Below, one piece after another: positions 56,501 to 59,500 of a DNA stretch of 64,000 nt (within the stretch, counting starts at the first letter, position 1; each line of letters opens with the position of its first letter). The DNA lies in contig NW_027361696.1 of NCBI RefSeq assembly GCF_039654945.1, forward strand, positions 17,980,001 to 18,044,000. Reading direction: 5' to 3'. The notes under the pieces were generated by a model, which saw only the letters and a list, made by a program, of their open reading frames with translations, was not told the origin of the DNA and ran no database searches. Origin of the DNA: Dendrobates tinctorius. Taxonomy: Eukaryota. Position numbers and translations under genes: made by a program.

Positions 56501-59500
56501 CTCTCTGCACAGTAGTCACGCCTCTTCTCCTCCTTCTCCTCTCTGCACAGTAGTCACGCCTCTTCTCCTCCTTCTCCTCTCTGCACAGTAGTCACGCCTC
56601 TTCTCCTCCTTCTCCTCTCTGCACAGTAGTCACGCCTCTTCTCCTCCTTCTCCTCTCTGCACAGTAGTCACGCCTCTTCTCCTCCTTCTCCTCTCTGCAC
56701 AGTAGTCACGCCTCTTCTCCTCCTTCTCCTCTCTGCACAGTAGTCACGCCTCTTCTCCTCCTCCTCTCTGCACAGTAGTCACGCCTCTTCTCCTCCTCCT
56801 CCTCCTCCTCTCTGCACAGTAGTCACGCCTCTTCTCCTCCTCCTCCTCCTCTCTGCACAGTAGTCACGCCTCTTCTCCTCCTTCTCCTCTCTGCACAGTA
56901 GTCACGCCTCTTCTCCTCCTTCTCCTCTCTGCACAGTAGTCACGCCTCTTCTCCTCCTTCTCCTCTCTGCACAGTAGTCATGCCTTTTCTCCTCCTCCGC
57001 ACAGTAGTGATGCCTCTTCTCCTCCTCCTCTTCTACCTTCCAGGTTATTCTTTGGTAAGAACAAGGTGATGACTGTGGCTCTGGGGAAGGATCCGTGTGA
57101 TGAGTACAAGGACAATTTGCACAAGGTAGGAGGATTTGGCACAAATCCGCTCCGTCCACAGCTCGACACCTGGAATGTTTTACTTATATTGTTCTTATCC
57201 TGCAGTTGGGAAAATCTCTTAAAGGAGAAGTCGGGATCCTGTTCACCAATCGCACGGAGCAAGAAGTCAGAGAGTAAGATATGTCTGGTGTCTTGTCTGT
57301 CACTGTGTTATTTCTGCCGACTCATCCGTCACTGTCCTTGTGATAATGGATGAAGTCTGTGCCGGCCAGGATGTAGATTTTATCCACTGAGTACAGTCAT
57401 GGCCAAATGTTTTGAGAATGACACAAATATTATATTTTCACGTGATCTGCTGGCCTCTGGTTTTTATGTGTGTTTGTCAGATGTTTTTATCACATACAGA
57501 AATATAATTGCAATCATATTATGAGTAGCAAAAGGTTATATTGACAGTTAGAATGAGTTAATGCAGCAAGTCAATATTTGCAGTGTTGACACTTCTTCTT
57601 CCGGACCTCAGCAATTCTCCCTGGCATGCTCTCAATCAACTTCTGGATCAAATCCTGACTGATAGCAGTCCATTCTTGCAAAATCAATGCTTTTATTTTG
57701 TCTGAATTTGAAGGTTTTTGTTTGTCCACCCGTCTCTTGATGATTGACCACAAGTTCTCAATGGGATTAAGATCTGGGGAGTTTCCAGGCCATGGTCCCA
57801 AAATCTCAATGTTTTGTTCCCTGAGCCATTTAGTTATCACCTTTGCTTTATGGCAAGGTGCTCCATCATGTTGAAAAAGGCATTGTTGATCGCCAAACTG
57901 CTCTTGGACGGTTGGGAGAAGTTGCTCTAGGTGGACATTCTGGTACAATTCTTTATTCATGGCTGTGTTTTTAGGCAAGACTGAGAGAGAGCCCATTCCC
58001 TTGGCTGAGAAGCAACCCCGCACATGAATGGTTTCAGGATGCTTGACAGTTGGCATGAGACAAGACTGGTGGTAGCGCTCACCTGGTCTTCTCCGAATAA
58101 GCCGTTTTCCAGATGTCCCAAACAATCGAAAAGGTGATTCATCAGAGAAAATGACTTTACCCCAGTCCTCAGCAGTCCACTCCCTGTACCTCTTGCAGAA
58201 TATCAGTCTGTCCATGATGTTTTTCCTGGAGAGAAGTGGCTTCTTTGCTGCCCTCCTTGAGACCAGGCCTTGCTCCAAGAGTCTCCGCCTCACAGTGCGT
58301 GCAGATGCACTCACACCTGCCTGCTGCCATTCCTGAGCAAGCTCTGCACTGCTGGTAGCCCGATCCCGCAGCTGAAACACTTTTAAGAGGCGGTCCTGGC
58401 GCTTGCTGGTCTTTCTTGATCGCCCTGGAGCCTTTTTGGCAACAAGGGAACCTCTCTCCTTGAAGTTCTTGATGATGCGATAGATTGCACCTCAGTCAAC
58501 AATCTTTCTAGCTGCGATACTCTTCCCTGTTAGGCCATTTTTGTGCAGTGCAATGATGACTGCACGTGTTTCTTTAGAGATAACCATGGTTAACAGAAGA
58601 GAAACAATGATGCCAAGCACCAGCCTCCTTTTAAAGTGTCCAGTGGTGTCATTCTTACTTAATCATGACAGATTGATCTCCAGCCCTGTCCTCATCAACA
58701 CCCACACCTGTGTTAATGGAGCAATCACTGAAACGATGTTAGCTGGTCCTTTTAAGGCAGGGCTGCAATGATGTTGAAATGTGTTTTGGGGGATTAAGTT
58801 AATTTTCTAGGCAAATATTGACTTTGCAAGTAATTGCTGTTAAGCTGATCACTCTTTATAACATTCTGGAGTATATGCAAATTGACATTAGAAAAAATGA
58901 AGCAGTAGACTTTGTAAAAATTAATATTTGTGTCATTCTCTAAACTTTTGGCCATGACTGTACACCATTTTGTATGGTGGTATGGCGCCATCTAGTGCTA
59001 AGCTCTGACCACTTTTTTGAAAAGCGCCATAAAGGGGAGGGTGAGAAAAAATAGAAGTTTATTGAGCAAACATGCGGTTAAAGCTTGTATTTTCTTTTGG
59101 GGTCGGAGGGATGATCATGTCCCCCCCCCCCCCGTAGGTTCCTGAGAGATGCAGTGTAGTTACTAGTTCCTGGAAATATGTGGTCTGTCATTTGGATGTT
59201 TATTAGGAGGCTCAGAGGTCACAGCTGTGTGAGAGATGAAAATAATCAGTACAGTACTGAGCGCAGCTCAGGAGCACAAACTGCAGCTGGTGTTTATTAA
59301 CCTGTGGATGCATTTTTACAGATGGTTTAATCAGTTTAGAGAAATGGATTTTGCCCGGGCCGGGAACAAGGCCACCTACGGAGTGGTCCTGGATGAGGGG
59401 CCCCTGGAACAGTTCACCCATTCGATGGAGCCACAGTTACGACAGCTAGGCCTGCCCACCACGCTGAAGAAAGGTCTGTGCTCGTCCCTCCATACTGCTG

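What the first reader, a model, noticed from the sequence alone, without database searches (positions are those of the whole stretch)
58482..58505. A 12-nt hairpin-loop inversion is the only ORF-breaking lesion in the transposase
Arms AGATTG/CAATCT flank CACCTCAGTCAA. As assembled, the coding strand reads KIVD*GAIYRII. Flipping the loop gives [15 protein letters not shown], a typical Tc1 helix-turn-helix, and opens the full 338-aa ORF. Because the arms persist, the event is in principle reversible, a potential on/off switch for transposase.
Basis: partly seen in the sequence, partly recalled or inferred. Interest (0 to 1): 0.7.

Follow-up and report, generated by a model that had tools for sequence, protein, structure and literature searches.

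The report
Tiny inversion breaks a transposase gene
One copy of a very abundant fish-like jumping gene (Tc1/Traveler type) carries a 12-letter stretch turned end-for-end between two 6-letter inverted repeats, which creates its only stop codon. This is a clean example of a known replication error in a decaying copy, not a demonstrated on/off switch.

Summary
At 58482-58505 two 6-nt arms flank 12 nt that are the exact reverse complement of what four related DNA copies carry (0/12 direct matches, 12/12 after flipping). About 100 related transposases all read IAPxST there. The flip creates the single in-frame stop (TGA, 58494-58492, minus strand) in an otherwise open 338-codon ORF.

The element is a 1,567-bp Tc1/mariner transposon of the DD35E (Traveler) type. 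It has TA duplications and 46-48-nt terminal repeats and lies antisense in an MRTO4 intron. The genome is probably a poison frog's, where this family runs to tens of thousands of copies.

The best explanation is a spacer inversion by template switching between short inverted repeats, which is a documented mutation class.

The switch reading is not supported:
- The arms are only 6 bp and the hairpin is weak.
- No recombinase fits such a site.
- Family contigs at the loop read the unflipped orientation in two runs and are clipped there in two.
- This copy also carries at least seven private amino-acid replacements, six at positions conserved in 24-27 of up to 27 relatives.

Two points remain open. 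The flip was not confirmed in independent reads at this locus. A small residual contig depth through the loop in the window's orientation (about 0.5-1.5%, in two species) could mean further flipped copies. Earlier first-reader notes report other micro-inversions in transposons of this genome; none was checked here.

The parts
57394..58960 (-). Tc1/mariner DNA transposon, 1,567 bp, DD35E (Traveler-like) type, inserted antisense in an intron of the host gene MRTO4
   Evidence: Terminal inverted repeats and TA duplications. It is 95.6-96.4% identical over its full length to natural copies L001-L004. It is the only copy in the window.
57392..57393 (.). TA target-site duplication, left
   Evidence: Sequence read: TA followed by CAGTCATGG.
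58961..58962 (.). TA target-site duplication, right
   Evidence: Sequence read: CCATGACTG followed by TA.
57394..57438 (.). Terminal inverted repeat (3' end of the element relative to the transposase)
   Evidence: the repeat finder pair I1: 48-nt arms (including the TA), 92% complementary.
58916..58960 (.). Terminal inverted repeat (5' end of the element relative to the transposase)
   Evidence: the repeat finder pair I1.
57571..58587 (-). Transposase reading frame: 338 codons plus terminal stop, with one internal stop. The catalytic residues D149, D241 and E277 are present.
   Evidence: Translation. Pfam HTH_Tnp_Tc3_2 and DDE_3 on the downstream piece. Close relative P0003 matches the Sleeping Beauty catalytic domain 5CR4, E 3e-45. 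Triad positions.
58482..58487 (.). Inverted-repeat arm (AGATTG on the + strand)
   Evidence: The arm is identical in the window and in unflipped relatives.
58488..58499 (.). 12-nt spacer, inverted relative to the family
   Evidence: Exact reverse complement of the spacer in L001-L004. It is the only mutation cluster in the element with a template-switch signature.
58500..58505 (.). Inverted-repeat arm (CAATCT on the + strand)
58492..58494 (-). TGA stop codon created by the inversion (codon 32)
58479..58508 (.). Extended imperfect palindrome: 9-nt arms with one A/A mismatch next to the perfect 6-mers. The mismatch positions are not swapped, so both switch points lay within the perfect arms and the inverted segment is 12-24 nt.
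   Evidence: BLAST reverse-strand match of 30 nt at 93%, fold, and sequence comparison with L003.

Best explanation
This is an ordinary genomic copy of a high-copy Tc1/mariner (Traveler, DD35E) DNA transposon. It has suffered one multinucleotide mutation: an in-place inversion of the 12-nt spacer between two 6-nt inverted repeats that already existed in the family sequence.

The most likely mechanism is DNA-polymerase template switching, either at a replication fork or during repair synthesis. The nascent strand pairs through the first arm with the complementary strand, copies the spacer from that strand, and returns through the second arm. Length and arms are left unchanged.

By chance the inverted spacer contains an in-frame TGA. 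It replaces A-P-Q-S-T, which by my comparison from memory with Sleeping Beauty lies in the turn and helix start of the first helix-turn-helix, with V-D-stop-G-A. The copy is otherwise decaying neutrally. The flip is a mutation, reversible only at mutational rates, and not a regulatory device.

Shown: the inversion, its boundaries, the single stop, the family state and the extra missense changes. Inferred: the template-switch mechanism and the absence of switching.
For: - The spacer is the exact reverse complement of the state in 4 of 4 related DNA copies. Arms and length are unchanged, and the asymmetric positions next to the arms are unchanged.
- A script testing every cluster of private changes finds a reverse-complement explanation only for this one: a 24-nt span, against 4-5 nt for the others.
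- About 100 related transposases from fishes and frogs read IAPxST at the site, and none reads the flipped form.
- High-depth family contigs of the same species carry the unflipped spacer (X17 and X20 aligned through it; X22 and X3 clipped at 58487/58500 with loose letters TTGACTGAGGTG).
- The copy shows neutral-decay features. It has at least 13 private substitutions against its own species' family contigs. Seven of the nine in the ORF are nonsynonymous: P57S in GRPR, W190R in WGCF, W214L, L219H, Q220L, L329R and G333C.
- The hairpin is weak.
- Literature: spacer inversion between short inverted repeats by intermolecular template switching is described in yeast coding genes, including repeated back-and-forth flips over evolutionary time (PMC8604942). 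Short template switches explain many mutation clusters in human and ape genomes (PMC5453318, PMC9435742, PMC7954356). Small hairpin-loop inversions are widespread in chloroplast DNA (Kim and Lee 2005, as cited in PMC12928735).
Against: - The mechanism is inferred from the product, not observed.
[quoted passage not shown] Here the perfect arms are 6 bp (9 with one mismatch) and the spacer is 12 nt, so this is a weaker substrate than the documented ones.
- The flip at this locus was not verified in independent reads.
- Contigs lying through the loop in the window's orientation sum to depth 543-794 in X22 and about 2,000 in X3, against about 5 for unique sequence in X22. If real, the flip is not unique to this locus.
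Confidence: 0.85

Rival explanations
1. The flip is not unique. Either a flipped copy was amplified in trans by intact copies, giving a flipped subfamily, or the hairpin is a recurrent inversion hot spot among the tens of thousands of copies. Flipped and unflipped copies would then coexist in the genome. This would still be mutation, not regulation.
For: Residual summed contig depth across 58488-58499 in the window's orientation, with no other letters: 543-794 in X22 (same species; unique depth about 5) and about 1,850-2,170 in X3 (another species label). That is about 0.5% and 1.5% of the neighbouring family depth. The intact terminal repeats would allow mobilisation in trans. Recurrent spacer flips are documented in yeast (PMC8604942). 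First readers noted other micro-inversions in transposons of this genome (s1-377017, s1-389226, s1-382937; none checked).
Against: The depth figure may be an alignment by-product. The flipped 24-mer is the reverse complement of the unflipped 24-mer, so short family contigs can lie on the loop in reverse. No flipped copy was found by exact protein look-ups, by the short-ORF search or by pattern scans, but those collections hold almost none of this genome, so the blanks weigh little.
Confidence: 0.3
2. It is a programmed or selected reversible on/off switch for the transposase.
For: The arms persist, so a second event would restore the frame, and the flip is the only stop. Evolutionary back-and-forth flips of such spacers exist (PMC8604942).
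Against: No invertase-type system is known for 6-bp arms 12 nt apart, and a duplex of that length cannot be synapsed (established knowledge of Hin/Gin/Fim systems). The hairpin is no more stable than shuffles. Relatives are uniformly unflipped. The copy has private replacements in conserved motifs, so the 'on' state is doubtful. A single copy among tens of thousands (PMC6278860) cannot control family activity.
Confidence: 0.02
3. It is an assembly or sequencing artefact: the real locus carries the family orientation.
For: No listed contig spans the site at this locus in any public run laid. Inverted repeats are known sources of chimeric library artefacts (my own knowledge).
Against: Mis-polishing in repeats pulls copies toward the family consensus, not away from it. 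Contigs of X22 reproduce the unique flanks, both junctions and one private substitution of this copy (57408) with no differences, so the copy as assembled is otherwise faithful. An exact in-place 12-nt inversion is not a known consensus-level error (my own knowledge).
Confidence: 0.06
4. The inversion arose by breakage and rejoining, not by template switching: two nearby breaks or cruciform cleavage, with the small fragment re-ligated in reverse.
For: The product is the same as for template switching, and the palindrome could extrude as a cruciform.
Against: A 12-24-bp fragment is unlikely to be retained and re-ligated without loss or gain of letters, and none is seen. Six-bp arms give a very unstable cruciform.
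Confidence: 0.05

Closest known systems
Inverted-repeat spacer inversion by intermolecular template switching (Abraham and Hazkani-Covo 2021, PMC8604942; the short template-switch model of Loytynoja and Goldman 2017, PMC5453318)
   Same: The spacer is replaced by its exact reverse complement, the perfect arms are present before and after, and length does not change. The result is a multinucleotide change inside a coding sequence that alters several adjacent codons and is reversible by a second event.
   Different: The arms are shorter (6 bp perfect) and the spacer longer (12 nt) than in the yeast cases (arms over 9 bp, spacers 2-5 bp). The target is a neutrally evolving transposon copy, and the outcome is a stop codon, not amino-acid replacements.
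Small hairpin-loop inversions in chloroplast DNA (Kim and Lee 2005, as cited in PMC12928735)
   Same: Inversions of 5-50 bp bounded by short inverted repeats that form a stem-loop, with both orientations found among lineages.
   Different: Those have 11-24-bp arms, lie in a multicopy organelle genome with active recombination and are mostly non-coding. This one is a nuclear locus with 6-bp arms.
Traveler (TR, DD35E) family of Tc1/mariner transposons (Zong et al. 2020, PMC7093834)
   Same: About 1.5 kb, a single ORF of 338 aa, TA duplication, short terminal repeats (13-68 bp), 35 residues between the second D and the E, and occurrence in ray-finned fishes and frogs with signs of horizontal transfer. 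Salmonid relatives are about 81-82% identical.
   Different: Placement inside the TR clade was not tested by phylogeny. This copy is inactivated by a stop and by missense changes.
Programmed DNA inversion switches (Hin, Gin, Cin, FimB/E, shufflons)
   Same: Only the logic is shared: an invertible segment between inverted repeats that turns a gene on or off.
   Different: Those need a dedicated site-specific recombinase, recombination sites of tens of bp and segments of hundreds of bp, and they show both orientations in a population. None of these was found here.

Membership tests
Tc1/mariner, Traveler (DD35E) family | TA target-site duplication | tested here: met
   TA at 57392-57393 and 58961-58962.
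Tc1/mariner, Traveler (DD35E) family | [quoted passage not shown] | tested here: met
   Arms of 46-48 nt, 92% complementary. The element is 1,567 bp.
Tc1/mariner, Traveler (DD35E) family | Catalytic triad D, D, E with 35 residues between the second D and the E | tested here: met
   D149, D241 and E277, spacing 35. There is one extra residue relative to Sleeping Beauty (DD34E) in the alignment.
Tc1/mariner, Traveler (DD35E) family | Single ORF of about 340 aa with a paired-type HTH DNA-binding region, a GRPR motif and a DDE_3 domain | tested here: inconclusive
   Pfam HTH_Tnp_Tc3_2 and DDE_3 are present and the frame has 338 codons. In this copy, however, the first HTH is interrupted by the stop and GRPR reads GRSR. 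Relatives have both intact.
Tc1/mariner, Traveler (DD35E) family | Phylogenetic placement within the TR clade | not tested
   No tree with reference TR, Tc1, TRT or IT transposases was built. The only evidence is 81-82% identity to salmonid 337-338-aa transposases.
Inverted-repeat spacer inversion (template-switch multinucleotide mutation) | The derived spacer is the exact reverse complement of the ancestral spacer, with no length change | tested here: met
   12 of 12 letters against four natural copies.
Inverted-repeat spacer inversion (template-switch multinucleotide mutation) | Inverted-repeat arms already present in the ancestral state and retained afterwards | tested here: met
   AGATTG and CAATCT are present in L001-L004 and in the window.
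Inverted-repeat spacer inversion (template-switch multinucleotide mutation) | The event arises during DNA synthesis by strand switching | not testable with these tools
   Inferred from the product only.
Programmed DNA inversion switch | A dedicated site-specific recombinase and recombination sites of adequate length | tested here: not met
   The arms are 6 bp and the spacer 12 nt. The element's only ORF is the DDE transposase.
Programmed DNA inversion switch | Both orientations coexist at the locus in a population of cells or individuals | tested here: inconclusive
   No listed public contig spans the loop at this locus. Only family-level contigs were seen there.

The most novel reading that the evidence does not exclude
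The hairpin in the first helix-turn-helix of this very high-copy transposon family is a recurrent flip site. A measurable fraction of copies (about 0.5-1.5% of family depth, in two species) would then sit in the stop-bearing orientation and could revert. That would give a natural, countable readout of template-switch inversion rates in a vertebrate germline.
Probability: 0.12. Interest if true: 0.45.

Novelty: new member of a known kind. Interest (0 to 1): 0.22.

Why it matters
It is a very clean vertebrate example of an inverted-repeat spacer inversion. The ancestral state is known from many sister copies, the boundaries are exact, and the coding consequence (a stop) is unambiguous. Such events are often misread as clusters of point mutations and inflate divergence estimates for repeat copies. 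A family with tens of thousands of near-identical copies could in principle be used to measure how often short hairpins flip. As a regulatory device it has no support, and for the biology of this transposon or its host it is one more way for a copy to die.

Tried and rejected
- **Other copies in the window:** none.
- **Exact look-ups of the ORF pieces:** the two ORF pieces and an alternative-frame ORF are not in the protein and contig collections.
- **Word search with the 42-aa upstream ORF:** four hits, all unflipped salmonid-type fragments. Such short ORFs are probably rarely called, so the blank says little.
- **Pattern scans:** the flipped 36-mer gave 0 hits in metagenome contigs. The same context with any spacer gave 1 hit there (L004, unflipped) and 0 in prokaryotic genome and viral contigs. 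The denominator is too small to be informative.
- **Frog copies P0137 and P0139:** Only their proteins could be compared.
- **Template-switch signature in the four other clusters of private substitutions:** none.
- **Earlier-findings search by sequence:** blank.
- **Locus-level orientation from public runs:** not obtainable. All runs were contigs, and none of the listed pieces spans the repeat.
- **Handling of the broken frame:** I did not build, search or fold a mended ORF. The pieces were searched apart, and the stop was written X in the one script alignment.

Full report
**What is there**

The + strand at 58482-58505 reads AGATTG CACCTCAGTCAA CAATCT. It lies inside a Tc1/mariner transposon at 57394-58960 (1,567 bp). 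The element has TA duplications at 57392-57393 and 58961-58962 and terminal inverted repeats of 46-48 nt that are 92% complementary.

The transposase is on the minus strand, from the ATG at 58587 to the terminal stop at 57573-57571. It has 338 codons with exactly one internal stop, TGA at 58494-58492, and reads ...[19 protein letters not shown].... The piece downstream of the stop carries Pfam HTH_Tnp_Tc3_2 and DDE_3. A close intact relative matches the Sleeping Beauty catalytic domain 5CR4 at E 3e-45.

The catalytic residues D149, D241 and E277 are present, with 35 residues between the second D and the E. This spacing, the 338-aa ORF, the length of about 1.5 kb, the short terminal repeats and the TA duplication fit the Traveler (DD35E) family described in fishes and frogs (PMC7093834). 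I did not build a tree to confirm clade membership. This is the only copy in the window.

**Is the 12-nt stretch really an inversion?**

Yes. I searched the ORF pieces apart, as required. The 306-aa downstream piece finds 1,824 relatives. Every listed relative that covers the site reads IAPQST, IAPKST or IAPEST followed by IYRIIKNF. So do all 38 further cluster members whose site was read.

At the DNA level there are four natural copies:
- two Logan contigs (L001, L002);
- a Serrasalmus rhombeus genomic copy (L003);
- a metagenome contig (L004).

They are 95.6-96.4% identical to the window copy over the whole element. All read AGATTG CACCTCAGTCAA CAATCT on the coding strand, where the window reads AGATTG TTGACTGAGGTG CAATCT. 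All 12 letters differ directly and all 12 match after reverse complementing. The arms and the length are unchanged.

Next to each perfect 6-mer there is an A/A mismatch followed by two more complementary letters. These mismatch letters are not exchanged in the window copy, so both break or switch points lie within the perfect arms, and the inverted segment is 12-24 nt. A script that tested every cluster of private changes for a nearby reverse-complement template found one only for this cluster: a 24-nt span, against 4-5 nt for the other four clusters.

The hairpin itself is weak. As DNA it folds at -2.9 to -4.2 kcal/mol, with z -1.1 to -2.0 against shuffles. The arms alone would not be noteworthy. 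The comparison with the family is what makes the event certain.

**Context**

Two earlier follow-up notes of this scan call this genome a poison frog's (s1-366785, s1-364531). Consistent with that, the 90%-identity protein cluster of the closest relative contains entries from Phyllobates terribilis and Ranitomeya imitator, next to the characiform fishes Serrasalmus rhombeus and Prochilodus magdalenae. I did not verify the species of the window directly.

The element lies antisense in an MRTO4 intron. This rests on first-reader note s1-382959, plus MRTO4-like exon peptides in the ORF list that I recognised from my own knowledge.

Public runs of 'organism A' reproduce both unique flanks and both element junctions without a single difference (X22 pieces 57250-57420 and 58942-59250; X17 piece 58938-59089). 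One of these pieces includes a private substitution of this copy at 57408.

Summed contig depth over the element is 1-3 x 10^5, against about 5 on the flanks. That puts the family at tens of thousands of copies. This agrees with the published picture of fish-like Tc1 elements at tens of thousands of copies in a poison frog (PMC6278860).

**Orientation in reads**

All runs available were Logan contigs, so no listed piece bridges from a flank to the loop.
- In X17 and X20 the high-depth family contigs run through the loop in the unflipped orientation. It shows up as the expected block of mismatches plus two compensating gaps.
- In X22 and X3 family contigs are clipped at 58487 and 58500, with loose letters TTGACTGAGGTG, which is again the unflipped state.
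- A residual depth lies through the loop in the window's orientation with no other letters: 543-794 in X22 and about 1,850-2,170 in X3, a different species label. That is roughly 0.5% and 1.5% of the neighbouring depth.

This residue may mean additional flipped copies. It may also be short family contigs laid in reverse, because the flipped 24-mer is the reverse complement of the unflipped one and only the two flanking mismatch letters tell them apart. Searches for other flipped copies elsewhere were blank, but the collections searched hold almost none of this genome.

**State of the copy**

Against the family contigs of its own species, the copy has at least 13 private substitutions besides the loop. 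Nine lie in the ORF and seven of those change the protein:
- P57S, which turns the conserved GRPR motif into GRSR;
- W190R, in WGCF; the W is also present in Sleeping Beauty;
- W214L, L219H, Q220L, L329R and G333C.

Six of these seven hit positions where 24-27 of up to 27 full-length relatives agree; the seventh, position 220, is less conserved (16 of 27). This is what neutral decay looks like. It makes it doubtful that re-flipping would give a competent enzyme, although it would reopen the frame.

**Mechanism**

The product is the signature of inverted-repeat spacer inversion by intermolecular template switching: reverse-complemented spacer, retained arms and no indel. In that process the nascent strand switches to the complementary strand within the first arm, copies the spacer, and returns within the second arm.

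The process is described for coding genes in yeast. There it changes up to five adjacent residues and has flipped back and forth on evolutionary time scales (PMC8604942). It belongs to the broader class of short template switches that explain mutation clusters in human and ape genomes (PMC5453318, PMC9435742, PMC7954356). Small stem-loop inversions are also widespread in chloroplast DNA (Kim and Lee 2005, cited in PMC12928735).

The event may have happened in place, or during repair synthesis when the copy was made. The abstract of bioRxiv 10.1101/2023.08.09.552703 states that break-repair synthesis is far more mutation-prone than replication and gives rise to quasipalindrome mutations. I did not read that paper beyond the abstract. 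Compared with the yeast cases, the arms here are shorter and the spacer longer, so the substrate is weak and the event presumably rare.

**The switch idea**

Reversibility in principle is correct, because the arms persist. Nothing else supports a switch:
- There is no recombinase other than the DDE transposase.
- The arms are 6 bp and only 12 nt apart.
- The hairpin is no better than shuffled sequence.
- The relatives are uniformly unflipped.
- This is a decaying copy among tens of thousands, whose state cannot govern family activity.

I put this reading at about 2%, an assembly artefact at about 6%, and a non-unique flip (subfamily or hot spot) at about 30%. The last is compatible with the main mechanism.

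**Verdict**

This is a new instance of a known kind of mutation in a known kind of transposon. Interest is low to moderate. The one lead worth a cheap follow-up is the residual depth through the loop in two species, which a simple 30-mer count would settle. Earlier first-reader notes report other micro-inversions in transposons of this genome (s1-377017, s1-389226, s1-382937). They were not checked here. If real, they point to a general mutational process, not to a device specific to this site.

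Noticed in passing
window 57394-58960; L003 1127-2520; proteins P0137-P0143: The same transposon family occurs in Neotropical poison frogs and in Neotropical characiform fishes. The 90%-identity protein cluster holds entries from the frogs Phyllobates terribilis and Ranitomeya imitator and from the fishes Serrasalmus rhombeus and Prochilodus magdalenae. The piranha DNA copy is 95.6% identical to the window copy and 98.4-99.0% identical to the other family copies. This is a strong candidate for recent fish-frog horizontal transfer, in line with PMC6278860 and PMC7093834.
   Followed up: partly
proteins P0137 and P0139: Probable annotation errors in public frog genomes. An apparently intact 338-aa transposase of this family in Phyllobates terribilis is named 'mitochondrial glutamate carrier 1 isoform X1' (XP_073514773.1). 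A Ranitomeya imitator gene model of 804 aa fuses the transposase to a choline-transporter-like (SLC44A1) protein.
   Followed up: no
window 57408-58941 (private substitutions of the copy): The private point substitutions of this copy are transversion-rich. The count is 3 transitions to 10 transversions against the species' own family contigs, and about 13 to 28 against four outside copies. Vertebrate neutral decay usually favours transitions. This is unexplained; subfamily structure or clustered polymerase errors are possibilities.
   Followed up: partly
window 58488-58499, runs X22 and X3: Contig depth of about 540-790 (X22) and about 1,850-2,170 (X3) lies through the loop in the window's flipped orientation, far above single-locus depth. 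It may reflect other flipped copies in two species, or reverse-strand placement of family contigs on the palindrome.
   Followed up: partly
window 58567-58606: An imperfect 23-nt-arm palindrome (78% complementary) is centred on the transposase start codon (CCATGG). First readers reported micro-inversions that flip the start codon in other transposons of this genome (s1-377017, s1-389226), so palindromes at start codons may be another flip-prone site.
   Followed up: no
window 59126-59140: A run of about 13 C lies just outside the element in the MRTO4 intron, shortly before the next exon. It has no obvious role.
   Followed up: no
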